A stretch of DNA of 64,000 nucleotides. Origin: Phallusia mammillata. Lineage: Eukaryota. The notes below the pieces were generated by a model. That model searched no databases. It had not been told where the DNA came from and saw nothing but the letters and a program-made list of their open reading frames with translations. The DNA lies in assembly GCA_965637545.1 (NCBI GenBank), contig OZ281494.1, positions 17,360,001 through 17,424,000 on the forward strand, in the 5' to 3' direction. This document shows, in pieces, positions 1 through 36,127 of the stretch. Made by a program: the position numbers and the translations under genes. Every line of letters starts with the position of its first letter. Within the stretch, counting starts at the first letter, position 1.

Positions 1-1
1 T

Positions 2-823
2 GCAAGACAGCTGACTACAATAAGCAGAAGGACCTACACTGTTCCGTGTCCTAATTATATTTGGCACATAGATGGAACACATAAGCTCATAAGATGGAAA
101 TTTGTCATACATGCAGCTATGGATGGCTTTAGTCGTCTCATTACATTCTGCCACTGTTCAACCAATAACAGATCATCTGTAGTGTTAAAATTGTTTAAGG
201 AAGCTGAAGCAAAATATGGTTTACCATTACATGTTCGATCCGACTATGGAGGAGAAAATGTGCAAGTGTGGAATTACATGCTAGAAAAGCATCAGAACTA
301 TCATGCAGTTATTACTGGAAGCTCTGTCCATAACCAGCGCATTGAAAGGTTCAACCGTGATATAAACACACAAGTTGTAAATAAATTTTACAATGACTTT
401 TTCTTTCTTGAAGAAAGTAATTTGCTTGACCCAACAAATGATACAGATTTGTTTTGTTTACATTTTGTGTTTTGCCACATCATTAATAAGCGAATCCAGG
501 AGTTTGTTAATGCTTGGAACAAGCACAGTCTTTCCACTGAAAAAAATTGCACTCCTGAACAGTTGTTTCATCTTAACTTACATTTACTTCAACTGCAAAC
601 TTTAAACGATACTGGTAAAATAGATAGTGAGGATATTGTATGCCCAGGTACAAGTTCTGTTGAAGTAGACGCTATTCCCCATTTACCACATGAATGTGTG
701 AGTGAGCTACAGGACCTATTGCAGCAAAACTCTAATCTAGATGGAATTATTTTGTATAAAAATGCAGTCAATAAAACGTTGGAATATTTAATCCGGACAC
801 AACACAATGCTTTGGTAGTGTAA
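2..823 (+). CDS. Integrase core (rve, IS3/IS481-like) DDE transposase, 5'-truncated by the window
   Basis: The frame is open from nt 2 (ARQLTTISRRTYTVPCPNYIWHIDGTHKLIRWKFVIHAAMDGFSRLI...). The catalytic triad is intact: WHIDG (D), RSDYGGEN (D), NQRIERFNR (E). The C-terminal LFCLHFVF...FVNAWNKH...TPEQLF segment is typical of this family. Confidence 0.88.
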   Translation, partial: ARQLTTISRRTYTVPCPNYIWHIDGTHKLIRWKFVIHAAMDGFSRLITFCHCSTNNRSSVVLKLFKEAEAKYGLPLHVRSDYGGENVQVWNYMLEKHQNYHAVITGSSVHNQRIERFNRDINTQVVNKFYNDFFFLEESNLLDPTNDTDLFCLHFVFCHIINKRIQEFVNAWNKHSLSTEKNCTPEQLFHLNLHLLQLQTLNDTGKIDSEDIVCPGTSSVEVDAIPHLPHECVSELQDLLQQNSNLDGIILYKNAVNKTLEYLIRTQHNALVV

Positions 824-1032
824 ATTTGATGCATGAACTAATGTAACAGTTTTTTGATTTGCATGTTTTGAAAACAACACAAAAATGTGCCAGCAAGATG
901 TCATTTATTTCGGGTTTAAATCCAGGTAGTGACCAGAAAAGCACTGGCTAAAAAAGATCAAAAACAAAAGAACACCCAACTAGCCATTTCAAAGGATCCA
1001 AAATATCAGGGTAGATTTGTGTTATATTTCAG

Positions 1033-4000
1033 TTAAGCAACACCAAATCCGGGGGAATTCAGGATTGCAAAATCCATTGCTTCTTTGAAGTTTTCATACT
1101 TGCTGTATCTTGTGGGTACAGTCAATATGTTCGCACAAGTGTTTGCCAAAGGGTACATAGACTCGTTCGAGAACTCAATGGATGGAGTTGGAGAAAAACC
1201 AAGAGGAGGCACTTGATCTGCCCCAGTTGCAAATATTAAAATTTCTTTTATTGAACATAAAGATTCCCCATCTGAAATGAAAGTCAAAACACAAGTCATG
1301 TGTTGTATGCTAATGTGCTGAATGTGAATACCTTCAACATCCAGTATGTAATCCCTCCAGAAGGAAACCGCCCGATTTTCCTGGCATCTTTCGTTGCTTC
1401 CAGGTTCTGATAGATTTAAATTGATGAAAATTGAGTCAACAATTTCTATGCCACTCAATGGTTTATTGTTTTGCCACAGAAAAATATCCTCAAATCCATT
1501 TGGTGCCAATTTTGCCTTATGTAGCAAATTATGTGTCATTAGACCAAGTCTAAACCTTGAAATAAACAAAAACCTCTTACTGTCTCAGTAATATAAATCA
1601 TTGCTTTTAAGCCATACCTGGCCAATAACTCGGTAAGGCGATCCTCTGTATAAAATTTAATTGCTTTTTCAACAATGTCATTTTTGCATGACAGGTCCTT
1701 CACAAATGTAATGGAACCACAAATAGACAAGAAATCATCCATATCTGACAATGCCACATTTAATTCCTCTACTGTATCAGTATTTTTGATCTGTTGACAA
1801 GTTGAATTTATCTTACAAAGTTGACAGTTTAACATACAAATACTATACAATTGAATTAGCGCTTACTTTTGTTAACTTGGAAAACAAGACAGGGTCATTT
1901 ATAGTTGCAAGAGCGTCCAAAAAATTTCTTGATCTATCAAGAACTTGATCATACAATAACTGGGAAAAAAAGCGTGGAGCAGGCCCACCATGAATGATTG
2001 AAAGGGAGATAATACACCCATACACATAATACAGGTCCTTGGCAATTGCTATAAAATAAACACAACTATTAATTTGGTAGTATTTTTCATTCTTAATTTG
2101 CTTCAATATACCGTAACAAAAGTACACATTTTACAAAGTTGTTTGCTAATCAACAAACTGTAGAACTAAGGTATATCTAATGTACTATTATGTACCTGTT
2201 TCATTTCTTGTGAGAATTTTTGCTGTTTCATTTCCTTCAAATATTATGCTGTTTGCCACAGCTTGCATTACTAATCTTAAAAATTCTCTGGTAGGTCCAC
2301 CTGCATCTACAGCACCCTCAGACTGGCCAATATCATCACTAAATTTCACACTCATTCTTGCATTAGCACAAAAACTTTTTCGCTTTATGGCACGGACAGC
2401 ACAGTCCAGAACATTTTGGCGATTGACATTAAAGAAGTTTACTTGACTTTCATCGATGCTGTCTCTAATACACCTTATAGACTCATGAGCAGATAATTCC
2501 TCAACTTGGCACCTTCAGAAACACAGTTAATTAACCTTCTTTGTACCAAATATTGCTACCATGTGTCAAATTCCAAACTCATCGAAAAAACTAACACTGA
2601 AACATGTACCTATCTTTGTTTGGGGTTTCTAGCAATGAAGCCTCAATTGCCTCTTGAATCAGAGTGTCCTCATCAATTTCCTCAGATATCAAGTTTACAT
2701 AATCCCTAACAACATAAGTGCAATTTGGTAACCAATACACAAACATACCTGAAGTTATTTTGTTGTGTGCAAGTCAATTTTAGTAATTACAAATAACCAC
2801 AAAAAATTAAGAGATAAATTTAAGTGTCCACTTACATGTACAAAGAAGGTGTCTGACATGTGCCAGGTTTGGTATTTGAGCACTCCTGTAAACACAAAAT
2901 ATTTTTGCAATAAAAAATAATTTGAAATGTTAGAAAATCTAACTAGAAAGTTTTGCTCACCCCACACTTGAAATCTTCATCTAAAACTGAATTATATTTA
3001 TGCAAAGAAATGTTTGAACATGTTTTGTCACCTTTCTGCAATAAATTTATAAAATTGTCATTCCCTATTGTTTTATGATTGTTAATTTGACATTTACATA
3101 CTCATATTACCTCAACAGTTTTTTCTGTCAAAAGATTCATGGAGGATTTCAAAAGTTGGTGTTCTTTTTGTACAGTGACGTAAATAATGCTTTTACCGAG
3201 TGAAAGCACTGCAGCAGCATCCCATCTAAATGATTCACTTACTTTTGGCTTAACAAGTACTTTCAAACCAGGCAAATTGCTGAGATAATCAAACTGTAGT
3301 AAATCTTTTGACAATAATGGTGTTTGAAATGGAGTAAATTGACTTTTGAAAACATCTGAAATCTCTCTTCTTACTTCCTGTTCAGACCAGCTGTTACTTA
3401 TTGAAATCTTTGCAACTAACCCAATAGCAGCAAGTTCACTTCTGTTTTTTCCTCTTGGTATTTTAAACGCAATGTTGTGCGAGTTGTTTTGTACTTGCTC
3501 CATTATATTTGCAGGTATGCAAATTATAGTTCGGGTGTAATACATTGTTTTTGGTTTTGTTCGTCTTCTACCTCCTTTTACTGCGGTTGGCACATACCTA
3601 GATCCTCTTTGTTTTGTGCACGAGGGTAGTGAATGTTTGTAATCCTGCCAAACATTTTTATTTTTTTCAACAAAACCAACCCAAATAGCCGAATTAACCG
3701 AATGAAAAACACTAACTGTCATATACAAAACTACCTTTCTAAAATCGTCATCATCACTGTCAGATTCTATAAACAACAGCTTTGTTGCTTCATTTCCACC
3801 AGGCCTTGTCACCTAATTTAAAGTACAACATGTTTAAATGATAATGCTAGTGATTATATACATTTAAATGCAAAAAATACCTACAGGGCACAAAGTTTTT
3901 ATTTGTTTTAATTTTTAAGGTGTCAAATACTGAATGATATTAATCCAACAAGAACCATTTGGGAGTGTAAAAATGTTTGGCCTAAAGATAACTTATTTTT

Positions 4001-4208
4001 GTATGGGTGTTACCTAATGTAAATCAAATGGCAGAATTGAAATTTAGTTTACTTTTGATGGTTGTTCATGGTTGGGTGTCACTGGTCCAATTTTATCAGT
4101 TGTGGAAGAGCATGTTGGAGAATCCGAATTGTTGGTTACAGTACCAATAATTGCTGCAGCAAAGTCACCTACAGCTTTTTTTATGTGCTCTTGCAGGTTT
4201 GCATCCAT
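1033..4208 (-). CDS. G2E3-like HECT E3 ubiquitin ligase with a UIM-like motif, 10 exons, about 682 aa
   Basis: GT-AG exons 4208-4053, 3812-3735, 3644-3111, 2885-2836, 2705-2610, 2512-2196, 2048-1867, 1790-1618, 1555-1332 and 1271-1033 join in frame (2049 nt). HECT motifs: DAGGPTREF, SIIHGGPAP, IFATGADQVPPLGF, catalytic PLANTC, terminal GFG. UIM-like segment LIQEAIEASLLE. Confidence 0.85.
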
Positions 4209-4541
4209 ATTATCGTTTCGCCCAAAAAAACGAACTGAAACAAATCCTACGTGATAACGAGTACCTTCTATGTTACACCCACCGGGAGTTCACATAAAAA
4301 TATTTTTTTTCTGGTTTTGGAACCGAGATTTTTCACGCCGTTCGTTCGCTGCATTGCTGATGTTTAACCGTATTTGTCACTATCAGTCCTAACCTGTTTG
4401 GTTATATTTTTTATAAAATGGTACAGTTGTCAATGAACAGCTGATTTCTGAACGAAATCAGAAACGTAGCATGTAATTTAAGCCCCAACACCCTGTTGAT
4501 TATAATGGTTCGGTCCATCACTTAGTTCGTCATGGTTCAGT

Positions 4542-4904
4542 GCTAAATCGGAATGGCATTCCCGTTCTGATTTAGCTAAATCGTAATGATTTAGTTAAAT
4601 CGGAATGGAAATGTTATTTCTGTTCTGATTTAGCTAAATTGGAATGGCATTCCCTTTCTGATATAGCTAAATCGGAATGAAAATGTGACTCTCGTTCTGA
4701 TTTAGCTAAATCGGAATGGCATTCCCGTTCTGATTTAGCTAAATCGGAATGAAAATGTTATTCCCGTTCTGATTTAGCTAAATCGGAATGACATTCCCTT
4801 TCTGATTTAGCTAAATCGGAATGAAAATGTTATTCCCGTTCTGATTTAACTAAAGCGGAATGGCATTTCCGTTTTGATTTAGGTAAATCTGAATGGAAAT
4901 GACA
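4542..4904. repeat. Higher-order array of about 11 near-palindromic 22-mers (TTCTGATTTAGCTAAATCGGAA) with alternating 11- and 17-bp linkers
   Basis: The core GATTTAGCTAAATC is a perfect 14-bp palindrome. Linkers alternate TGGCATTCCCG and TGAAAATGTTATTCCCG, giving 33+39 = 72-bp periodicity. Copies degrade at both edges. Confidence 0.95.
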
Positions 4905-5219
4905 ACAAATATTTTTACAAACGGCGCCCCATAATCTATTGTGTACTAACAATGCGAAAACCCAGACACCTCAAGCGTCACTGGAGAAATGGTGACGTCA
5001 TAAACAGTTAAGACGAATCGCAACACTGGTCAGTGTAATTTGTGCATCAAGTTAAAATTTATTCTGGGCCTTTGGGGCGACATTTGATGTTTATACATAC
5101 ATGTGTAAAATATGTAAATCAATTTCTTGGCTGTTGGTGAAATAATTAAGCATCTGTGATGCGGCCGCCATATATATGATTAGTATAAGGTTTTACGTGA
5201 AAGTAGTTCAACTGTATTG

Positions 5220-7396
5220 TTAAATCTTACCTTTTTTGTATTCTTCCAGCTTGCCTCCCTCTATTGACGCTTTAATATTCGCTGCCACCAAATCAGCTTG
5301 CTGTTGTCCTGTATGCGGCGTTTTCTCCACATCACAATTATTTACATGACCAATAGCAAAAATATTGCTGCAACCTTGAACTTGTAAGTTGGCCTCAACC
5401 TTGATGGCTCCCGAATCTAGCAGCGCATTTTCTGAAGCAAAACAACTCCGTGCAAACTTTTGATCATGCATCTATTATGTGCATGATGTGAATTTTTTAC
5501 CTAGTGCCGGTTTGCAGAAATCGCTGGAAATCGTATATTGGTCACAAGGAACAATTAGGTCCACTTCAACTTCTTTGCCATTCGATGTTTTTACTTTTTG
5601 GTTTTCCAGAAGTTCGTTAAACTTTAAATCATCTGTATTGGTGACACTTTGATCTGTTTGCAATTGGCAAGTTAGTTTCCACTGTACAAACACTTTTTTT
5701 GCTAAAAAGTATAAGCTGTTTAAATATCTTTTGCGGCATAAGTAAAACGCCACTTCCCTTATCATAAAAGTAAAGTTTGCTGGAACGTAAAACGTAGCAC
5801 TCAAATCCCCGAAACATTGCACTTTTTAAGTCATGATTACAATCAATGAAAAAAATAATAACCGCAAATATCAGTTTGAACCACACCAACCGACCTAGCA
5901 TCAGATCAACGTCTTTTCGTTGCAGTTTTTCATTTAACTCGTCTTGAAACTCTTGATTTACGTGTGGTGATGTCAGATTCTTTTTGTGATGAATGATGAT
6001 AACCTGTAAATTAACACACAATAACACACCAGCATGTATCCATTACAATCACTGGTAATCAACATCCACTTGCCTGTTTGTCAGGATAATCCGTCTTAAT
6101 TTCTCCAGCTAGCTCACAAGCAAAGGTGTTTCCCCCGATGCAGGCAATGCGGTGCGCTTTTTTCATCTATGCAATTATGTATTTGAGTTTATTGCAGATC
6201 TGTGAGCAAGCTCAAAACGGGACCCGAATCCGAAAGTACAACCCCAAAACCGACCTAACCCGCTTTTAAAAATAAAGTCCTATTTAAGCCGGAAAGTTAG
6301 TTTAGCCAAGGTGAAATGCAACTCCATACAACACGGAAGTGCTTTCATTTTACATAACAGCGTATGTTCTTTACCGTTTCTGTAAACTCTTTGTACAAGT
6401 GTTTTGCCCCCTCCATTGTGGCATCTTGTTTGTTTTCGTACTTTGCAGGAAATGGTTGAGACGCTCCAGCGGCTATTACCAAGTAGTCGTAGGCGACCTG
6501 AAAAATGTTTTCAGAAGTTCTTTTTTTAAACACCTTTAATAACTCTATAAAACTTAGTTGTGGTAGCATCAGGTAATAGAGATTGGATTCGACTCCAGTT
6601 ATTTGCTATAGGCATATCCACGTTTTTTTTGCTCATAAACTTATTAGAGGCCCCATATATTTAAATTAATAAAGATTTCTTATGGCCAATGCACTCCGAA
6701 ACGATATGATTTTATTGTTACAAGCTCGAAAAAGTGATGGTGCAAATGCACTTTGCTATGATATCAAGCTACGTAGAATGTGCAGAGCAATTAATGGGGA
6801 ATCAAGATTATAGCACGGCAAGGCACAGCACCAAACATTAGCGGATTTTAGCGAAATAGCAATGCTAAATGTTGTCAATGTTCCGGCCTAACCACTACAT
6901 GCTTTGATACGCGGGCTAAATTTTATACGAAATGTGGCATTTGGCTTTAATTTGTTTGCCATAATATTTGAGTTGTAAAAAAACATTACAACAACAAACG
7001 TTTTTTTTAACTGCAGCGGTACAGGATGAGACGCTGACACTCACTTTTTTTCCATTTTGCAACATAACAACATTCTTGTCTTTTTTAATCGCAGTCACTC
7101 GTTGTCTTATGTGGTTGGATATAATCTTGTTAAACGGGATAAACATGTTTTTGTCAAACTCTGCAAAGTATAAAATTGAAAATAATATTTTTCTTACGTG
7201 AACTGTATTCACACTTACCCGGTTCCACTATTGAACGAGCAGATGCCACATTGTGCTGCATACATTCTCCCGGATCAATTAAAGTTGTTTTACAAACGGT
7301 TTCTTTTTGTAACAGGAATGCCAGACGCGTCCCACTGTAGCCACCACCAACTATCAGAACGTGCGGGACTTTAGGCTTGGAATTACCAAAACCCAT
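5220..7396 (-). CDS. AIFM2: Divergent AIFM2/FSP1 paralogue with degenerate NAD(P)H and FAD motifs; canonical last exon not found
   Basis: Starts MGFGNSKPKVPHVLIVGGGYSG (myristoylation consensus plus first GxGxxG). Seven exons join in frame at the same intron positions as the neighbouring copy. The second motif is GGNTFACELAGEIK, and AIGH replaces AIGD. If the last donor is not used, the frame ends KKGKI* at 5220. Confidence 0.8.
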
Positions 7397-8217
7397 GATA
7401 CCGGTGTGAGTTATAGAGAAGAAATAAACTTGTTTCTTTTTTAGGCCTGACTTTGTTGGAGATTTAAAAGTAAGCTATTGTAAAACATGAAGAGTTATGC
7501 CTGAAAAATTAAGAACTTTATGCAGATTCAGATACCATATACAAAAGGAAGAGAGACCACCATTACTTTAGCTAAGATCTGGCTTAAAATCTGTCTTTGA
7601 TGATGTTGCTTGTCAGCTGTACTTTCTATAAATGCCTAGAAATGTATTGTTTTAGAGATATCAGCACCAGAATCTATATTTTCCTAATCTATATTCAGCA
7701 AGTAAGTTAGTTTTTCCAAGCACTCGGTCACAATGACTTTGTAGGCCTTCTATCAAGATTACACAGCCATTTCGCGTAGGCAGCGGGGCCACTTAAGTTG
7801 CTTGCTTGAGTTGGCACTTCAAGCCAATGAGCGACCTTTCTTGACAATGCCAGCCATAAAAACAAACCGGGTATTCGACATATGCGTACAAAGGACTCGA
7901 AATGTGATATGTGTTTGTGGTAATAAAAGCATCGTATAAGTTTCAAAAGTCGAGCGTCTGTCTTGGCTGATGTGGTTTTAACGCGGAATTAAAACCACAC
8001 ACACAGTTCTTTTTGACACGCACAAACATTAAGATAATTTTACATAGTTTTAAAATTTTACCTCTCACGACCCTCGTTTTCACAAAAAAACTAAAATGAG
8101 TTGCAGGCCAAGACAGAAAAGAAACATAATGCGGGGTTTTCGCTTAAATAGGAGTAACTTCGATTGTGCAGTTTGACTCCTGCAGTAAATATTAACATTC
8201 GGCCTATATTAAAATCT

Positions 8218-8338
8218 CAGACTGAAAACTTTGACAAGTCTGAAGTCGTCCACCGTTTTATTTAGACATACATATTTCACCTGAGTAATTATACTTAAAA
8301 CGGTGGACGACTTCAGACTTGTCAAAGTTTTCAGTCTG
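8218..8338. repeat. Perfect 43-bp inverted repeat with a 35-bp spacer (MITE/foldback-like)
   Basis: CAGACTGAAAACTTTGACAAGTCTGAAGTCGTCCACCGTTTTA (8218-8260) and its exact reverse complement (8296-8338). No clear TSD. Confidence 0.85.
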
Positions 8339-8847
8339 TTATTATATGCGACCGTTGTCTCCATCTGTCGTACTGAGTCTCTGGTGACTCGTGATTTATA
8401 ATATACTACACACAGTTTATATTAAAATCTGATTTTAAATAATACTTCATTTATCATGGTATTCTTTCTTCGTTCATTTACCCGCTGTTAGGCAGTACTT
8501 TAATGCGAATCGAAATTTTTTTAATCTTAATTGAAGCTTGTTTTTGCTGAAAGAACTCACGATTGGAAAGAACGAAACATACGACATTACTAAAAGTTAG
8601 TGGAATTTTCTGCCTGTTGTTGGGTTTCGTTGTTAGTTTATGTTATTAAAACGTAGTATCTTTAGTAAGGTGACATGAGTAACGGAGGACATACGTCGTG
8701 AAACAACACGATGACTTAAAGCTACGTTGCTTCTCTATAACTTCAACCAAAAACATTAAAAAAAGGGGGAAAGTTTGATACATATTAAAATCTCAGTGGC
8801 GTAGCAGGATGATACATCAACGTAAAATGTAGTCAACTATGCGCTGT

Positions 8848-11817
8848 TTAAGTCTTTGGTGGTTTTAAACCCACATCTCCCCAGACCTTGGACGAAAAAA
8901 GATCTTTGCTTTTCAGATATTTCACCATCACGTTTCCAAGAGTAAATCCTTTTACTTGCCCCGTTCCGCCATTACGACCCAACGGAACCAACATCATAAA
9001 ATCACCTGTATGAAAAATATCCTTAGTACACGCCAGTGAAAGGTTTGTAAACACGTTTAAATTAGGCTACACTTACTTATAGTAGAAAATGTTGGATAAC
9101 ATCTTCAGCTTTACAAGCGTTGCCTTATAAAGAAGACGTGAAATGTGGTCATTCTTACTTGTTTACATTTCTACTGAAAATTAGTCGTATTAGCCCCGCC
9201 ATATTGGAACAAGAAAATAATTATAAGCAGGCCAAAAATGTCATAGCTTTGTAAACACCCTTGAGTCAGAAGCCATTTGATAAAAATCCTGGTCGTTTTC
9301 AAATTTATGTCGTTTTTAGTTTTACCAGCGATGTGTACCCAAGTGGAAATAATAAACTTAAAAGCCTACCTGGAACATAAGGTTTTCTTTTAGAGTCTGA
9401 CGCATCGGCAATCCAGTTTTCAGTCAAGTATTCGGCGTGGTATTTTGCGACGTAACACAATTTTTCTTCCACGATGTTTGTGACGTCACCGATTGCATAC
9501 ACGCCTTCTTGACCTTTGACTTGAAAAAATTCATCGACTTGGAGTTGGCCGGAATCCGTTAACGATGAACCTGCAGTGAAAGTTATTACAGAGTTTTTGA
9601 TGTTAAAAAATGCTACGTTGGAAATGCATTAGCTTACCAAATACGTCCTTGCAAAAATCGGTGTTGGTACGGTTTCCTACGCATGATATTACCAAATCGG
9701 CAACGATGCCTTTTCCACTCTCTGTCTTTACAACTTGACCCTGCATCGACTTGTTCAAACTGAGCTCGTTCATGTTTTGTACGTGTTCACCTGCAAGTAT
9801 AGGCATATAACCGAGAGCTTTTGATTTGTAGTGATATTTTGGTTGTTACTACTAACCAAACATAATCTTAACTCCTAGTTCTTCAAGCCCAGTTACTATT
9901 GCTTCCTTTACATCCGTTTTCAGCTTTTCTGATCCCAAGTAGTTCTTTGACTGAATTAGCGTAACCTACAAAGAAAAAGTAGCCATCAGTCTCGTTCACA
10001 AAACTTGAGGTAGAGGTTGTTTTGAACCGTTTACCTCGTGTGTAGGAAATTCGGTTTTTATTTCGCCAGCTAATTCCACGCCAACTGGTCCTCCGCCGAC
10101 GCAGACTACATGATTCGACTTTGCAATCTGCAAAACCAGAAAAGACCGTAAAATGTATTTCTACCGCTGTAAACAATCAACAAATATGATGATGATCATG
10201 ATGATGATCATAGCCTACTGTATTTTGGCCAATTTAATTACTAAACAATCTAATCAACCAGGACGTAAAGCAGGCTTACTCAACTATCATCAGCAACGAT
10301 TCCATTAATTAAAGTTATTCAATTTTGCGATAATGTGAAATATGTCCAAGGATGGTGGAGCCATTTTTTTTCTTTTTGTGGCATTTTTTGAAAACAAAAA
10401 TGACTGATTAGTTTAATAAACTTTCAAAAACATTTACAGTTTTAGTTTTTTTGTCAAAATGAATTACCTCGTCAACAAAGTCGTCGTACACTTTTATACC
10501 TTCCTCAATAGATACGTTCGGATGAGTTGAAACAATTTTTCCGGGAAATGGCGAAACTGTACCCGTAGCTATGACCAAATGAGTGTAGGTAATCTGCACA
10601 TTAGGAAACGGATGATCAACAACAGGGATACAATATCGTAACGTTTGTTTACACAACTGATATGAAAAACATAACCATGCACTCACGCTGTTATAAAAGC
10701 TACGTTGTATATTTACCAACCTTCACGCCACTTTCAAGTATGACCGTTTTATTTTCGTGATCAATTTTCGCAGCTTTTCCCCGAACAAATGAATCGCCTG
10801 CGATTTCTTTCAAAGGGACGAACACCTTTTTAGCATATCCTGCAATGAAATCGCAATGAAGTCTTAAGAAATAGCGGTTGGCAAAATGTTCAAGTCAAAA
10901 ATTCAAGTCAAATGTTCAAGTCAAACATTCGTAACACGGATTTTACGATTGTAGACATGGTTGTACGTCACATAACACGGTTTGTCTGTCAATAGAACAT
11001 TTGAATTTGTGACAAGAATTCGGTCACACAAACATCCAGTTAACATCCATCAATTGCATTTGTCCAAACTGATCTACTCTGGGTAAATGGTCTTTTGGGT
11101 AATCTCTGTTTTTAGATCAACGTCTTTAACACGCGATTTCGTAATTGTAAACTTTATTGGTAGCGCCATGTTGGTGGACAAGCCCGTAATTGCTATGCAC
11201 GCATATTTTAGAACTGTTAGCTTGGCCCCATTAACAATGCCAAGTCGGGTGTAAACTGACCAGATCTTCTTTTGAATAAATGTCGTTCTCTCTTTAAATA
11301 TTGCTGACTCGTCTTCAGTAAATATAAAGTGAACAATTTTGGAGTAGGAAGCTCCACTGTGCATTTCGCTTTACCGTTAAAATCCCTGTACTTCGTGTGT
11401 TTATATTAATACATTGGCTTAATTCTGTCATAGTTTCATAATAACATAATTGTAATCATACAAATGCAGTGGCGTTCTACTTTAATTCAGGTTAGACAAC
11501 AAAATAAAACTCACGTGCAACCTTATGTTTAGCGTGTTAATTAAACAGGATTCAATTACTAGCTGATATTGCTAAAACATTAGATGTCTATAAAAAGCAA
11601 AATAGGTCGCAACATCTCATGTGTCGATTTTACCTTTCTGGACACAAGCTCGTAAAGCAGCGACACAGTGAATCATGGAATCTTTGGGATCAATTACGGT
11701 TACTTTACAGAAGTTCTTATTCCTGAGTAGGGTGGTAAGATATGCTCCGCCGTAGCCTCCTCCTACTATTACCACGTGCATGTCGTCTTGAAACGGGACG
11801 GAAGTAACGGCACCCAT
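8848..11817 (-). CDS. AIFM2: Ferroptosis suppressor protein 1 / AIFM2, canonical copy, 8 exons
   Basis: Motifs: MGAVTSVPFQDDMHVVIVGGGYGG, LVIATG, VCVGGGPVGVELAGEIKTEFP, YAIGDV, and last exon LVPLGRNGGTGQVKGFTLGNVMVKYLKSKDLF. All match known AIFM2 motifs and exon phases are consistent. Confidence 0.92.
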
Positions 11818-13959
11818 TCCGTTTTCAGAGTGCAAATTTGTCAGACTAAAAGAAACTATGAAAAACACACACATTAAAATTCACTGTGCAGTATATAGTG
11901 TCTGCCCCGTGCAATGTTACACACTGTCTGTAAATCTTTGTTCAAACGATTGTGTAAAACATTTCAAAATATTTGCAGTACAAACGTCTATCTGACAGTC
12001 AGGCTTCATCCTAAGTGCGCTAAAGTTATAAAAAAAAACTATTTAGCCCTGCCAGTAGGCTACCTAGCCTACATAAGCTTAAAGTAAACCTTGTGCTAAG
12101 TAGGATTTGTTACTTTTCCAGTGTAGGATGCAACACATTATCTATTTCGGTGGACATTTTTGCATGAATTGAGGTTTGTACCGCAAAAGCGATTTTTTTG
12201 CTTTAGTAGCCTATACCACAAAACTACCGCCTCGAGCCAAACCGTAATTAAGGCGTTTGCAATTTTAAAAATGTTAAAGATATTCGCAGCATTGAACTTT
12301 GCTGCATGGTTTAGTAACACACTTTGGTTTTGGAAAACACTTTGAACAAGTACTAAGTGCACGGCGGAACGTGTTGACAGGTGACACTGCAGATACTTTG
12401 CCCAACTCTATCGATTAGGCCTAGGCTACTCTGAATTCTTGTTCAAGCGAACTAATGCAAAGAAACAATACCATGTTTAGCTTAATTAGCAGTGATGTAG
12501 GCTAAATAACTTCTTTTACCCATACAGCAACCATTGCAATGATCACGGCATGAAAAGGCTATCTAACTGGGTGTAGGCTAAACAAGTAGCTAGCCAAGAC
12601 TATCATCACACTTGGGAGCTGTTTAACGATAGCCGATGCTCTGCTGACACTGCTGTTTGTCTGCGTCTGTGTAATCTAACATTCCTTCGGGACAAACGAA
12701 TTAGAAGTACCAACAGTATCTTTTTCTCAGATTTAACCCCCATCAGACCTCGTAAAATGGGGTTAATGATTAAACCCTCCTGCTTTGGTATGTTTTTTTT
12801 TATTTCAGTTGAGGCAACTACGGAAAATTATACACAAACTCAGTTTAAAGTTGATCGGCCTATGTTTTCACGCTGATTGCCAATCTCGATTTGTAACTTC
12901 TGACTTTTACAGTCCGAGGAGCAAAACTTATGCATTCCAATCAGTTTGCAACGAGTTTTTTGATAAAACTTTGGATAACTTTTACCCTTAAGCATTAGCG
13001 ACATATACATGTAACTGACATGAAAACTTACTGCCAGTGCAACGTATTTAAAATTTTATTTCCCTTAAAATCACAATCAGCATCAGCTTGATGAAGTTAA
13101 AAAAGCAATTTAGTTACGAAATCTATTGTCTTAAGTTTTTGGTCCCCAACGTAACCAGTATTCACACATTAAATAGAAGAATTGGTGAGATCAAAAAATA
13201 ATTTTTAGGTTTTTCCCCAGTTGGTAGAAATAATTCGGACGTTAAACATGAGCGTATAAAGCGGGAGTTTTTTCTCAAAATAAGTTGTGCAAAAAAAGTC
13301 ACAACGATTAGTACAAAAGTATTAATTTGAATGTTTTTCGAGGTCTTGAAACTATTTTTAGGAACTATTTAACAGTATGACACGTTACCACAGAGTTGCA
13401 GTTTGAGATTAAAATAAAATTTGAAACATTCGAACAAATTAGTGGTTGTAACTTGTAAGATGCTGTTTCGCATTTCAAGTTTATTTGTTTTCTTGTTCCT
13501 CTTGTGGTTGTCAACAATCAAGTTTTAGTTCAGGATTTGGCTTGGCTCCAGCCGCCAGGATTAGCAGGTTTAGCATAAATCCAATTGGATTGAGTTGGAG
13601 ATAAAAAGTTGTGAAAACGAACTCTCTAGTTTTACAAAATTTCGAGCATTTTTTGAATTAACGTCGGGTTCGGGTAGCGAACAAATTGCGACGGAATATA
13701 ATTTGGTTTTGGATCAAAGTAATAAAATGCGTGTAAATATAAATACTTGTGTCTGCTATGCATTGATGGTGATAAAATAATCCACACAGTTTTACTGTAA
13801 AGTTACTGTTTTGTTTGTTTCCTTGAATTTAAGTTGCATTTTGTAATTTTTATCAAAAAACTATTTTCTTATGTGTGATTTTGTTCTGTTGCACAACAAC
13901 TACAAAATACTTTATTGGATGCAGCTAAGTGGCTTACTTGTTGGAGGGCCCATTAGACT

Positions 13960-16900
13960 ATGGAATCAAGGCATAAAAAGAAACGAAGATCATCGGTACA
14001 GCATTCTTTCATAAATTACAGCATTCACTTGACCAAGACCATGTTTTTGTTATAATGTTTGTCTGTAATAGTTCTTGTTCTGATTGCTGCATCTTAAGCC
14101 TTTGTTTTCACAGATATTAAAAAGTCGGAAATCTCTAGCTGATGTTGACTCTAATGCTGTTGACATAAGCATGGTGAGCTTAAATTAAACCTCTTTTCTT
14201 AAATTAAACCCAACTCTGTGACAGGAAGTGTGGTGCTTATACTAGAAACCCGATTTCTCCAGACCCTCTCAATCCTGTTTGGTTCCAGTTTGCCTGAACA
14301 ATTTTACTGTTCTAAAATGTATATTTTTGTTGCACAAGATGCATGCACCACTTAAATTAGAGCCATTGTGCTGACCTAAGTTTAAATATATATAAATGAT
14401 TTAGTCCCCCAAAATAAAAAGGAAATCAAACAACCACCTGACAGGGCTGCAATAAAATCTTTTGAACTTTACACATTCTCATTACAAAACCTACTAAAGA
14501 TGAATTTTGAGACACAATTACATCATAAAATGTTCCCATGTTTTCTCAAAAAAGATTTTTCCTAAATCAGTAAAAAACCTTACTTATACCACCCACCTGG
14601 ACTTTGAGGTAAACATGTGCTACAACATTTTCGGCAGCAACATAACAACTACAACTTTTTTATTGAGTATTAATTTCAAATCCTTATAAATGGTGCAGTA
14701 TTTATTTGTGTTTAATTTTTTACAGACTGAAGAAGACCGAAAAGGTTTAAAGCGTAGAGTGAGCTTTGCCAACACCTACCAAGTCAAGTAAGTTATTACC
14801 TGACAACCAATGTTTAAATGTCATGTAAAAATGTTGTTTTTAACTTCAAAAGGTTTAAATTATCTATCAAGCATTAACTCACTGCCTGCAATGATAAATT
14901 AGGGATAAAAAAATTACTATATTGTAGAAATGTTTTTACAATTTCGATACATTTGTTTTTTATCTGTATTTTTGATGTTATGTTCCTTTTGTAATAGTTA
15001 TTTCTTGTTCATTTTAGGGAAATTTCTAGGGTTGCTGATATAGCTGAGAAGTGGCCTGATCCAACCTCCCATGTTGGTAAGGAAAAACAACAACAACCTT
15101 ATAACATATATAATATACATTATACATTATACTGTTACTGACATGATTTCATTGTTTACAAGATACAACCAACATTAGTGATGCATCAAAGCTAAGTTGC
15201 GCTGTTCCCACCAAGAAACCGTCTGGAGAACCAGATGCAAGCAGTCTGTCATCACTTCTTCTGGCACCATTAGTGCAGCAAACATGTCCAGCGTCAAGCT
15301 CAAATGCAGTATGCCATTTTAGCACTAAGTTTTAGTAATAAAACTTGCTTGTTGATTGTTACACAACATGTCCTGATGACTCCTGAACATTATCAAAACT
15401 AAATAAGTTGTTCCTCAATATCTTAAGCTTTTTTGTTGCAGCTAAATGAAACAACTGGATCAAACACGGATTTGACTATGGTGACTTCTACTGCATTGAG
15501 CCATCCACAATCCATGATTTCAGATTCAAGTGACATAAATTCTGCATCTGGAAAGGAAGTTCCTTTTAATGGCGACTCTATGATATCCTTACAACAACCA
15601 CCTGTAGTGCCAACATATATGGTAAAAGAAGAAATTAATGAGGAAGAGCCTGGCTTTCCATTGAATTACATGAATGAAGATGATGATGATGGCATTACAG
15701 AGACCTTCGATAATGCCCCACTACCTGCATTTTTGCACACAACTACTCAAGGAGGCTCAAACAACAGAGCTGCTACAATGCCACTTTTATCACAGTCCAG
15801 TCCTTTGAAAGTTTGTGAAAGTGAAGGATACAGCACCTTGCACTCGAGCATTGGTTTGACAGATAGTATGCCAAACAAATCACTTCCTCCACTGACAGCA
15901 AGGCATACTGGTGCTCAAACACCTGTCAACAATTCAGTTTTGTCAACATTCATGTTGCAAAGCAGTAATGAAGACCAGGAACTAAACAACACAGTTTTTC
16001 TTGATGAAACTGTGGATTTGACAAGACAAATTCCCTCAACATCTAGTCTACTGGCAAATAATGATCACTCATTTGCAGGACCTTCATGGTTACAGGAAGC
16101 AAAAGGATTAAATCGATCACTGAGAAGTGGGTTAAAACAGAGCATAGAAAATGAAACTGGTGATTACAATTGTGAAAATATGGAGATTACCTGTAAAATC
16201 ACATCAGTAATACAGCAACATGTGACAACACCTTCTGATACATGTTCAGAAAAAATATCTGATTCTCACACTGCTGTGCTTAAAAGTGGTTTGACCCAAT
16301 CCCGTACCTCAGTATGTACTGACAAAAATGACATGGAGTTTACTTGTGTAATCACGAAGTCAGGCACAAACATTGCAGGTGATTCTTTGGATCCAGATGA
16401 TAACCCACCACTTCTGTCATCAAATGCATTTAGTGAAAATGCTGCTGCTACAAATGATTCTATGGAATTTACCATGACACAGTCCACATTTCCAGACACT
16501 CATCCAAATGCAGGCAATGAAATAGCCAAGTTTCTGGCACTTGATCCAAAAGAGGGTGAATCAAGCATTGTAGAGTTATCACCAGAAAACAGGGTAATCG
16601 CAACTGATACACTATATGTAAGCAGCCAAAAAAGTAGAGATGCTACTGTGGACAATAATGAGAAAAGCGACACAGACACAATGGGCTCCTCAGGTAATGG
16701 TGCAGACCAGGAAGTGTCAACGCATTTCAGGAAGCTGTCCAAGGCAAGAAATTCAATGGGATTGTATAAGCGCAACATAATACAGTCGTCTCAGAATTTC
16801 GGCAGGACTTTAGATACAAGTCATTTTAACCAAAACAATGACAATGAAAGTTTTAACCTTTCAGCTTCTGCTAGTTCCAGTCCACCGTTTTACCACTCCC

Positions 16901-35209: not shown

Positions 35210-36127
35210 ATGGTTCCATTTGACCTTGATAAAATGATTGAGATTGCAAAAGAATGCAAATACCTACCAGAATATGATTTAAAGAGACTATGTGATTACG
35301 TTTGTGATCTGTTACTTGAGGAGTCAAATGTTCAACCAGTTAGCACACCTGTGACTGTGTGTGGTGACATTCATGGACAATTTTATGATTTGTTGGAACT
35401 TTTCAAAAATGGTGGTGAAATACCTGAGACAAATTATGTGTTTATGGGAGATTTTGTTGATCGTGGGTACTACAGTTTGGAAACCTTCACTTACTTACTT
35501 ACACTGAAGGCAAAGTGGTCAAACAAAATTACGCTTTTGAGAGGAAATCATGAAAGTCGACAGATCACCCAAGTATATGGATTTTATGATGAATGCCAAA
35601 CCAAATATGGAAATGCAAATGCCTGGCGCTATTGTACAAAGGTTTTTGATCTGCTAACCATTGCAGCAATAATAGATTCAACCATACTTTGCGTTCATGG
35701 TGGACTCTCCCCAGATATCAAAACTCTCGATCAAATTCGCACCATTGACCGCCAACAGGAAATTCCTCACAAGGGTGCCTTTTGTGATTTAGTGTGGTCT
35801 GATCCTGAAGATGTTGAAACGTGGGCAGTTTCACCTCGTGGTGCTGGATGGTTGTTTGGAGCCAAGGTTACAAATGAGTTCGTACATTTGAATGGTCTGT
35901 CGTTGATATGCAGGGCACATCAGCTGGTCCATGAAGGATTTAAGTACATGTTTGATGAGAAACTTGTTACTGTGTGGTCTGCACCAAATTACTGTTACCG
36001 GTGTGGAAACATTGCTGCTATTCTTGTCATCAAGGAAAAAGATGAAAAAGAGGCCAAGTTGTTTCATGCTGTTCCTGACAACATGAGAGTTATTCCAGAG
36101 AGAAACACAACTCCCTATTTTCTGTGA
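35210..36127 (+). CDS. PPP6C: Serine/threonine-protein phosphatase 6 catalytic subunit, intronless CDS
   Basis: 305 aa. The N-terminus [42 protein letters not shown] is PP6-specific. GDFVDRG and RGNHE motifs and C-terminal TPYFL are present. Confidence 0.96.

What the first reader, a model, noticed from the sequence alone, without database searches (positions are those of the whole stretch)
5220..7396. FSP1 paralogue with an open frame but lost cofactor motifs: possible pseudoenzyme next to a canonical FSP1
Seen: the frame is intact over seven exons and retains MGxxxS myristoylation and the first GxGxxG. However, the NAD(P)H loop GGGPVGVE becomes GGNTFACE, the FAD-binding GD becomes GH, ATG becomes AAG, and CVG becomes CDQ relative to the neighbour at 8848-11817. 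The Glu equivalent to human E156 is kept. Inference: several targeted motif losses without frameshifts suggest a membrane-anchored, non-catalytic or altered-specificity regulator of ferroptosis defence, possibly through heterodimers with the active copy.
Basis: partly seen in the sequence, partly recalled or inferred. Interest (0 to 1): 0.7.

Follow-up and report, generated by a model that had tools for sequence, protein, structure and literature searches.

The report
Divergent FSP1 copy missing its tail
This sea-squirt gene belongs to an old, fast-changing branch of the anti-ferroptosis enzyme FSP1 whose NAD(P)H site is broken in every known member, and this copy shows only seven of its eight exons, so the tail the enzyme needs is missing here.

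Summary

Three points change the reading.
1. It is not a private degenerate copy of its neighbour. It groups (support 100/99) with one Clavelina and two Ciona "FSP1(-like)" proteins. In this old tunicate clade every member has a broken second GxGxxG and has replaced the Gly that matches human G244. G244D and D285N inactivate human FSP1 (PMC10643123).
2. The gene is incomplete. The relatives have eight exons. The stop at 5222-5220 is reached by reading through the conserved intron-7 donor (5231|5230). No exon for the C-terminal domain exists anywhere in the window. About 300 nt further on, a high-copy element begins.
3. That domain builds the dimer and the FAD and quinone pockets (PMC10516921), so the heterodimer idea has no support for the product as read.

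The neighbour is a canonical 8-exon FSP1 and is transcribed and spliced. No RNA was seen for this gene, but the RNA data are thin.

Best reading: a non-canonical, probably catalytically dead, membrane-anchored FSP1 relative. Whether this copy still works is open, and it may be a gene recently truncated by a transposon. An exhaustive profile search found no further clade members. An earlier scan note had already described the adjacent element.

The parts
7219..7396 (-). Exon 1 of gene A: start codon, MGFGNSK myristoylation-type motif, FAD-side GxGxxG (GGGYSG)
   Evidence: donor CGG|gtaagt
7045..7160 (-). Exon 2 of gene A
   Evidence: acceptor tttgcag, donor gtgagt; aligns with exon 2 of gene B and of Ciona P0002
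6375..6497 (-). Exon 3 of gene A; ATG motif changed to AAG at 6473-6465
6074..6166 (-). Exon 4 of gene A: degenerate NAD(P)H-side motif GGNTFACE (6136-6113). It ends at a GC donor (CAG|gcaagt) where Ciona and Clavelina have GT.
5895..6003 (-). Exon 5 of gene A (109 nt, same length as exon 5 of gene B)
5501..5653 (-). Exon 6 of gene A (153 nt, same length as in gene B); PCDQ at 5549-5538, where Q replaces the Gly that matches human G244
5231..5431 (-). Exon 7 of gene A up to the conserved intron-7 donor; GH at 5351-5346 (human D285 position). Three haplotype differences: K323K, A308T, G299A.
5220..5230 (-). First 11 nt of what is intron 7 in the relatives (gtaagatttaa). Read through, it adds the last two bases of the Gly-325 codon, then Lys, Ile and the stop TAA at 5222-5220.
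   Evidence: Ciona has the same 'TAC AAA AAA G|gt' junction and then an exon 8
5058..5063 (-). AATAAA 156 nt after the read-through stop: a possible poly(A) signal if the transcript is not spliced
   Evidence: a pattern match only, in AT-rich DNA
4934..5219 (-). Unique-depth DNA between the stop and the repeat element. It holds no homologue of the C-terminal-domain exon.
4542..4933 (.). End of a high-copy element (palindrome array; contig depth 10-35 times the unique level). Candidate transposon lying where exon 8 would be expected.
   Evidence: depth, array-length joints at 4719-4910; earlier notes s1-375395 and s1-375554; HECT ORF at 1036-1584
8848..11817 (-). Gene B: canonical 8-exon FSP1 (380 aa) with all motifs and the C-terminal domain. 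Exons 11817-11634, 10839-10721, 10593-10468, 10127-10035, 9965-9857, 9790-9638, 9570-9370, 9005-8848.
   Evidence: An RNA contig in X4 is spliced exactly at intron 4 (joint 9963/10033, cut +2), and another covers exon 6.

Best explanation
The locus holds the first seven of eight exons of the local member of a tunicate-specific, fast-evolving FSP1/AIFM2-like clade, whose other known members are one Clavelina lepadiformis and two Ciona proteins.

Shown:
- The clade keeps the N-terminal MGxGxSK signal, the FAD-side Rossmann motif and the FSP1 fold.
- In every member the NAD(P)H-side GxGxxG is broken, and the Gly matching human G244 is replaced by Gln or Glu.
- This copy also has His at the FAD-binding Asp (human D285), Ala in the ATG motif and a GC donor in intron 4.
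- Its frame ends by read-through into intron 7.
- The exon for the C-terminal domain is not in the window, and a high-copy element starts about 300 nt downstream.

Inferred:
- The protein cannot work as a canonical NAD(P)H:ubiquinone reductase.
- The clade most likely acts as a membrane-anchored, non-catalytic or differently working relative of FSP1.
- In this genome, exon 8 either lies beyond the roughly 6-kb element, making an enlarged intron 7, or the gene has been truncated to a form without the C-terminal domain. That form would lack the dimer interface and the quinone pocket.
For: - Tree: gene A groups with Clavelina P0001 and Ciona P0002/P0003 at 100/99, on a long stem inside the tunicate FSP1 radiation. 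Gene B sits elsewhere.
- Identity: A is 42.5% identical to Clavelina P0001 and 39% to Ciona P0002, but only 34% to B.
- Synteny: the Clavelina relative lies between an Spc7/KNL1 gene and a single-exon Metallophos gene. The window has Spc7-like matches at 15.0-15.2 kb and the Metallophos gene (93% identical) at 35210-36124.
- Conserved columns: 56 columns are at least 90% conserved in 50 canonical FSP1s. All clade members lose G244, and each breaks the second GxGxxG differently. Ciona also loses E156 and K355.
- Literature: G244D and D285N kill human FSP1 (PMC10643123). The C-terminal domain is required for the dimer, the FAD and CoQ pockets, activity and ferroptosis protection (PMC10516921). 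D285, K355 and L329 contact the cofactors (PMC10896247).
- Intron 7: its position and phase are identical in Ciona, Clavelina, gene B and gene A.
- No C-terminal-domain exon in the window by tblastn or by profile HMM.
- Fold: AF2 model with pLDDT 94; best PDB matches are FSP1 structures (TM 0.94, rmsd 1.3 A) over residues that stop before the C-terminal domain (also 32).
- Constraint: 0 haplotype differences in exons 1-6 (772 nt) against 9 in introns (1193 nt), one-sided Fisher p = 0.011, post hoc.
Against: - No RNA contig covers gene A in the two small RNA-like runs, while gene B has spliced contigs. B's depth is only about 3, so this is weak.
- Exon 7 carries 2 non-synonymous and 1 synonymous haplotype differences, while B has 0 and 2. 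This could mean relaxed constraint.
- The GC donor, D285H and T109A occur only in this copy within the clade, and could be early decay.
- Loss of cofactor binding is inferred from motifs and from human mutants, not measured.
- Only three lineages define the clade, and no more were found.
Confidence: 0.6

Rival explanations
1. This copy is a dying gene. It belonged to the divergent clade but was recently truncated, probably by insertion of the repeat element into or behind intron 7. It is now an untranscribed or useless remnant whose frame has not yet had time to break.
For: - The C-terminal-domain exon is absent from the window.
- A high-copy element starts about 300 nt after the intron-7 donor.
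- There is no RNA contig on A, although B is seen.
- The GC donor in intron 4 and His at D285 occur only in this copy.
- Two of three exon-7 polymorphisms are non-synonymous.
Against: - There is no stop or frameshift in 327 codons, and all splice sites are usable. CAG|GCAAGT fits the recalled consensus for working GC-AG introns.
- The terminal branch of A (0.61) is no longer than that of B (0.54) and is shorter than the Clavelina relative's (0.96).
- Exons 1-6 show no haplotype differences against nine in the introns.
- Exon 8 may simply lie beyond the element, outside the window.
- The RNA data are too thin to show silence.
Confidence: 0.3
2. It is still an active oxidoreductase that binds NAD(P)H, or another electron donor, through a non-canonical site. 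This would be altered specificity rather than loss of catalysis.
For: - It keeps E156, E160 and K293, D41, N49 and K118, and the FAD-side GxGxxG.
- The predicted fold is an undistorted FSP1 fold.
- GxGxxA occurs in some nucleotide-binding proteins. This rests on general knowledge and was not tested here.
Against: - The middle Gly of GxGxxG is Asn.
- G244 is Gln, and G244D abolishes activity in human FSP1.
- D285 is His, and D285N loses FAD.
- The C-terminal domain, with K355 and the nicotinamide-contacting L329, is missing from the product as read.
Confidence: 0.1
3. One reading: the protein regulates the neighbouring active FSP1 by forming heterodimers with it at the membrane.
For: - The two genes are adjacent and on the same strand.
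- Both carry an MGxxxS start.
- FSP1 works as a homodimer.
Against: - The FSP1 dimer is built mainly by the C-terminal domain (PMC10516921), which the seven-exon product lacks.
- In Ciona and Clavelina the relative is not next to a canonical copy.
- The C-terminal domains of the clade are strongly diverged from canonical ones.
- Co-expression is not shown.
Confidence: 0.08

Closest known systems
FSP1 / AIFM2 (human, chicken; PDB 8wik, 8jsc, 7xpi, 9ift)
   Same: - Pyr_redox_2 two-Rossmann fold (Pfam E = 4.6e-32).
- Best sequence and fold match in the PDB (E = 8.7e-58; TM 0.94).
- N-terminal MGxxxS and FAD-side GxGxxG.
- E156 and E160 equivalents.
- Intron positions shared with the canonical neighbour.
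   Different: - Second GxGxxG is broken (G to N, G to A).
- G244 equivalent is Q.
- D285 equivalent is H.
- ATG is AAG.
- No C-terminal domain in the window, so no K355, no L329/L330 loop and no dimer interface.
Clavelina lepadiformis 'ferroptosis suppressor protein 1-like' (P0001) and Ciona intestinalis 'ferroptosis suppressor protein 1' (P0002, with P0003)
   Same: - One clade at 100/99 support.
- Shared MGxGxSK, EPE, DYPDK and GC.NI signatures.
- All lack G244, and all have a damaged NAD(P)H-side glycine motif.
- Same eight-exon plan up to intron 7.
- Partial synteny with the Clavelina locus.
   Different: - Both relatives have exon 8, giving a diverged C-terminal domain, and a GT donor in intron 4.
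- Ciona keeps GD but loses E156 and K355.
- Clavelina keeps ATG and K355 but has GE for GD.
- The copy here alone has GH and AAG.
Engineered human FSP1 mutants G244D, D285N and the C-terminal-domain deletion (residues 1-316)
   Same: The natural sequence combines changes at the same three places that each inactivate human FSP1 in vitro and in cells.
   Different: These are natural substitutions (Q, H) in a 34%-identical background. Their effect has not been measured.
Type II NADH dehydrogenases (NDH-2, Ndi1)
   Same: Same superfamily fold and the same motif set: GxGxxGxE, WxxG, GD.
   Different: Far weaker match (TM about 0.73, 16-20% identity). No myristoylation motif in those enzymes.

Membership tests
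FSP1/AIFM2 family (homology) | Pyr_redox_2 two-dinucleotide-binding fold, with closest sequence and structure matches to FSP1 | tested here: met
   Pfam PF07992 E = 4.6e-32. PDB phmmer best hits are all FSP1, E = 8.7e-58. Foldseek TM 0.94 to FSP1. The gene nests inside the tunicate FSP1 radiation.
FSP1/AIFM2 family (homology) | N-terminal myristoylation consensus MGxxxS | tested here: met
   MGFGNSK at 7396-7376; MGxGxSK in all clade members. This is a pattern match only. Phe at position 3 is disfavoured in the PROSITE pattern as I recall it, but the canonical Saccoglossus protein also has it.
Catalytically competent FSP1 (NAD(P)H:quinone oxidoreductase) | NAD(P)H-side GxGxxGxE | tested here: not met
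   GGNTFACE: the Gly matching human G151 is Asn and G154 is Ala; Glu is kept.
Catalytically competent FSP1 (NAD(P)H:quinone oxidoreductase) | Gly of the WxxG/CxG motif (human G244) | tested here: not met
   Gln here, Glu in the Clavelina and Ciona relatives. G244D abolishes activity (PMC10643123).
Catalytically competent FSP1 (NAD(P)H:quinone oxidoreductase) | FAD-binding GD motif (human D285) | tested here: not met
   GH at 5351-5346. D285N lacks FAD and is inactive.
Catalytically competent FSP1 (NAD(P)H:quinone oxidoreductase) | C-terminal domain with K355 and the quinone and dimer elements | tested here: not met
   No such exon anywhere in the window by tblastn or by profile HMM; only gene B's exon 8 is found. 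It may lie outside the window.
Catalytically competent FSP1 (NAD(P)H:quinone oxidoreductase) | Measured FAD content and NAD(P)H oxidation | not testable with these tools
   Needs recombinant protein.
Pseudoenzyme (conserved inactive homologue) | Loss of residues essential for catalysis or cofactor binding, with the fold retained | tested here: met
Pseudoenzyme (conserved inactive homologue) | Long-term retention under selection | tested here: inconclusive
   At clade level, open frames exist in three tunicate lineages at 35-42% identity. For this copy, there are 0 differences in exons 1-6 against 9 in introns (p = 0.011, post hoc). dS is saturated between species, so no dN/dS was possible.
Pseudoenzyme (conserved inactive homologue) | Expression | tested here: inconclusive
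   No contig on A in X3 or X4. B is seen at depth about 3 in X4.
Unprocessed pseudogene | Frame-breaking lesions (stops, frameshifts, lost splice sites) | tested here: not met
   None in seven exons. The only oddity is a consensus-like GC donor.
Unprocessed pseudogene | Truncation or loss of an essential exon | tested here: inconclusive
   Exon 8 is not in the window, and the repeat element runs over the window edge.

The most novel reading that the evidence does not exclude
Tunicates have kept, since before Ciona, Clavelina and this species diverged, a myristoylated FSP1 relative that is catalytically dead. Its members are natural equivalents of the G244D and GxGxxG mutants, and in Ciona also of E156 and K355 loss. 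It would have acquired a non-redox role at membranes, for example binding quinone or lipid, or scaffolding or regulating the several active FSP1 paralogues of these animals.
Probability: 0.35. Interest if true: 0.6.

Novelty: new variant of a known kind. Interest (0 to 1): 0.4.

Why it matters
FSP1 is the second main defence against ferroptosis and a drug target. All known biology treats it as an NAD(P)H:quinone (and vitamin K) reductase.

A naturally conserved lineage would be the first hint of a non-enzymatic FSP1 function if it keeps the membrane anchor and the fold while carrying, in three independent versions, the lesions that kill the human enzyme. That lineage sits in Ciona, a tractable model. 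Databases currently name these proteins simply 'ferroptosis suppressor protein 1', which probably over-annotates their function.

For this locus the practical lesson is narrower. The seven-exon 'intact' frame is an incomplete gene model. Its stop codon is intronic, and a transposon-like element lies where the last exon should be.

Tried and rejected
- **Search for exon 8.** I ran tblastn with gene B's exon 8 and with the C-termini of P0001-P0004. I also ran a profile HMM of the C-terminal domain against all six frames of the window. Only gene B's exon 8 was found. A weak hit at 4023-3958 contains a stop and lies inside the repeat element, so I rejected it.
- **DNA left of the window.** The findings look-up does not accept coordinates below 1, and no tool gives that sequence.
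- **RNA evidence.** No run on record as RNA holds either gene. X4 holds 7% of gene B's words and proved to be spliced RNA. Nothing lies on gene A in X3 or X4. The runs are too shallow to call A silent.
- **A haplotype without the element.** The contig joints at 4719-4910 are only length variants of the palindrome array.
- **More clade members.** The alignment-based word search and the exhaustive profile search of 1.84 billion representatives found none beyond Ciona and Clavelina. P0305 (749 aa, 402 bits) looked promising but is two fused canonical copies with intact motifs.
- **dN/dS.** Between species the proteins are 35-42% identical, so dS is saturated. The two Clavelina haplotypes differ at only 3 intronic sites, which is not informative.
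- **A-clade-specific conserved residues.** Only five were found (K7, E60, E188, D201, C278). That is too few, from too few lineages, to infer a new site.
- **Literature.** No paper links FSP1/AIFM2 paralogues with tunicates.

Full report
**What is there.** Reading the minus strand of 5150-7450 and 8700-11950 in three frames, and fixing the splice junctions by eye and script, gives two genes with the same architecture.

- Gene A has exons 7396-7219, 7160-7045, 6497-6375, 6166-6074, 6003-5895, 5653-5501 and 5431-5220. That is 984 nt and 327 codons, with no stop or frameshift.
- Gene B has eight exons between 11817 and 8848 and encodes 380 aa.
- Exons 4, 5 and 6 have identical lengths (93, 109, 153 nt), and intron phases agree.
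- Both proteins are Pyr_redox_2 flavoproteins (Pfam E = 4.6e-32 and 1.8e-36).
- Gene A's best matches among solved structures are all FSP1 (E = 8.7e-58).

- MGFGNSK and GGGYSG are kept.
- GGGPVGVE has become GGNTFACE.
- ATG has become AAG.
- The CVG motif has become CDQ.
- GD has become GH.
- The Glu matching human E156 is kept.

DNA contigs of two samples (X1, X2) agree with the window over exons 1-6, so these are not assembly errors.

Gene A is only 34% identical to gene B. It is 42.5% identical to a Clavelina lepadiformis protein (P0001) and 39% to a Ciona intestinalis protein (P0002; P0003 is a 94%-identical Ciona sequence).

- In a careful maximum-likelihood tree of 39 FSP1 sequences, these four form a clade with 100/99 support. 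The clade sits on a long stem (0.53) inside the tunicate FSP1 radiation, while gene B falls in a different tunicate group.
- Gene order gives modest extra support. In Clavelina the relative lies between an Spc7/KNL1 gene and a single-exon Metallophos phosphatase. The window has short Spc7-like matches on the expected strand at 15016-15236, and the phosphatase (93% identical, Pfam E = 5e-45) at 35210-36124.
- In Ciona and Clavelina no canonical FSP1 lies within 10 kb of the relative.
- The best hits of gene B are only 46-49% identical (Phallusia, Clavelina, Ciona). The organism is therefore a tunicate with no close annotated relative.

**The motif erosion is a property of the clade.** I aligned 50 canonical FSP1s (vertebrates, amphioxus, hemichordates, echinoderms, tunicates) and took the 56 columns that are at least 90% conserved.

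- Gene A keeps 38 of the 56 columns, changes 12 and lacks 6. Clavelina keeps 39 and Ciona keeps 44-45.
- The Gly matching human G244 is replaced in all clade members: Q in gene A, E in Clavelina, E in both Ciona sequences.
- The NAD(P)H-side GxGxxG is broken in all of them, but differently. Gene A and Clavelina have Asn at the middle Gly, and Ala or Asn at the third. Ciona has Asn at the first Gly, and has also lost E156 (Thr) and K355 (Leu).
- D285 is His here and Glu in Clavelina, and is kept in Ciona.
- The ATG threonine is Ala here and Met in Ciona, and is kept in Clavelina.
- By contrast, the N-terminal MGxGxSK, the FAD-side GxGxxG, D41, R54 and E160 are kept by all.

The literature gives direct precedents.

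- G244D abolishes human FSP1 activity more completely than E156A. D285N lacks FAD and is inactive. Both lose ferroptosis protection (PMC10643123).
- D285 binds the ribitol and phosphates of FAD. K355 binds the isoalloxazine and pairs with E156. L329 holds the nicotinamide (PMC10896247).

A canonical NAD(P)H:quinone reductase is therefore unlikely for any member of the clade. This is an inference from motifs and from human mutants, not a measurement.

**The gene model is incomplete.** Gene B, Clavelina P0001 and Ciona P0002 all have an eighth exon encoding the C-terminal domain.

- In Ciona, exon 7 ends 'TAC AAA AAA G|gtaaac'. Gene A has 'TAC AAA AAA G|gtaaga' at 5231|5230, which is the same codon, the same phase and a good donor.
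- No homologue of exon 8 exists in the window. tblastn with five different C-termini, and a profile HMM over all six frames, find only gene B's exon 8.
- From 5219 down to about 4934 the DNA is at unique depth. Below that, contig depth rises 10-35 fold in a palindrome array.
- Earlier notes of this scan describe 1-4904 as part of a cut-and-paste element carrying a HECT ligase, whose other end lies about 1 kb before the window. I confirmed a HECT ORF at 1036-1584.

Two situations remain that I cannot separate. Either the element sits in intron 7 and exon 8 lies beyond it, outside the window, or exon 8 is lost. In the second case, the product equals the engineered human C-terminal-domain deletion (residues 1-316). 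That construct does not dimerise, does not form the FAD and quinone pockets, and does not protect cells (PMC10516921). The same paper undercuts the heterodimer idea for the seven-exon product, because the FSP1 dimer is built mainly by that domain.

**Is this copy alive?**

In favour:
- There is no lesion in 327 codons.
- The terminal branch (0.61) is like gene B's (0.54) and shorter than the Clavelina relative's (0.96).
- The X1/X2 contigs and the window show no difference in exons 1-6 (772 nt) against six substitutions and three indels in the introns (1193 nt). The one-sided Fisher p is 0.011, chosen post hoc.
- The AF2 model is confident (pLDDT 94) and superposes on FSP1 structures at 1.3 A.

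Against:
- The intron-4 donor is GC here and GT in both relatives. CAG|GCAAGT does fit the recalled consensus for working GC-AG introns.
- Exon 7 carries K323K, A308T and G299A, while gene B has two synonymous differences only.
- In the one run that proved to be RNA (X4), gene B has a contig spliced exactly at intron 4 and another on exon 6. Gene A has nothing. Gene B's depth is only about 3, so the absence is weak evidence.

**How wide is the clade?** A word search seeded with the four-sequence alignment and an exhaustive profile search of 1.84 billion representatives returned no further member. The next scores are canonical FSP1s, and the one intermediate hit (P0305) is a fusion of two canonical copies. 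Most tunicate genomes have no protein predictions in these libraries, so this bounds what is annotated, not what exists. I found no paper on FSP1 paralogues in tunicates.

- The interesting unit is the tunicate clade, not this copy.
- The 'intact' frame is seven-eighths of a gene.
- The proposed heterodimer mechanism is not supported.
- I put about 0.6 on the combined reading, with this copy's functional status left open.
- I put about 0.3 on the rival that this copy is a recently truncated remnant.

Nothing in the window was an N run.

Noticed in passing
window 8200-8420: A short element between genes A and B has contig depth about 300 times the unique level (26,773 against about 90 in X1). 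It is also present in the RNA-like runs X3 and X4. It looks like a very high-copy, possibly transcribed, repeat family.
   Followed up: no
window 4542-4933: The palindrome array at the end of the putative transposon differs in length between the window and the read-derived contigs. In both X1 and X2, at unique depth, 4720-4908 is replaced by 29 other letters.
   Followed up: partly
window 1036-1584 (minus strand): An ORF with the C-terminal part of a HECT domain (Pfam E = 4e-12), on the same strand as gene A. It lies inside the element that earlier notes call a HECT-carrying DNA transposon.
   Followed up: partly
window 35210-36124 (plus strand): An intronless 305-aa PPP-type Ser/Thr phosphatase, 93% identical to the Clavelina gene that lies next to the Clavelina relative of gene A.
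   Followed up: partly
window 15016-15236 (plus strand): Short tblastx matches (52-82% over 22-25 aa) to the Clavelina Spc7/KNL1 gene that flanks the Clavelina relative. This suggests conserved gene order with gene B inserted, or lost in Clavelina.
   Followed up: partly
window 9026-9097 and 8031-8121: Structural haplotype variants at about half depth in X1 and X2. In intron 7 of gene B, 70 nt are replaced by 24 other letters. In the A-B spacer, 89 nt are replaced by a single G.
   Followed up: no
same genome, outside the window (earlier notes s1-392439, s1-361617): At least two more FSP1/AIFM2-like genes are noted elsewhere in this genome. One is about 5.4 Mb away. Another has a hydrophobic N-terminal anchor instead of Gly2, which resembles the Phallusia P0132 / Clavelina P0171 type seen in my tree.
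   Followed up: no
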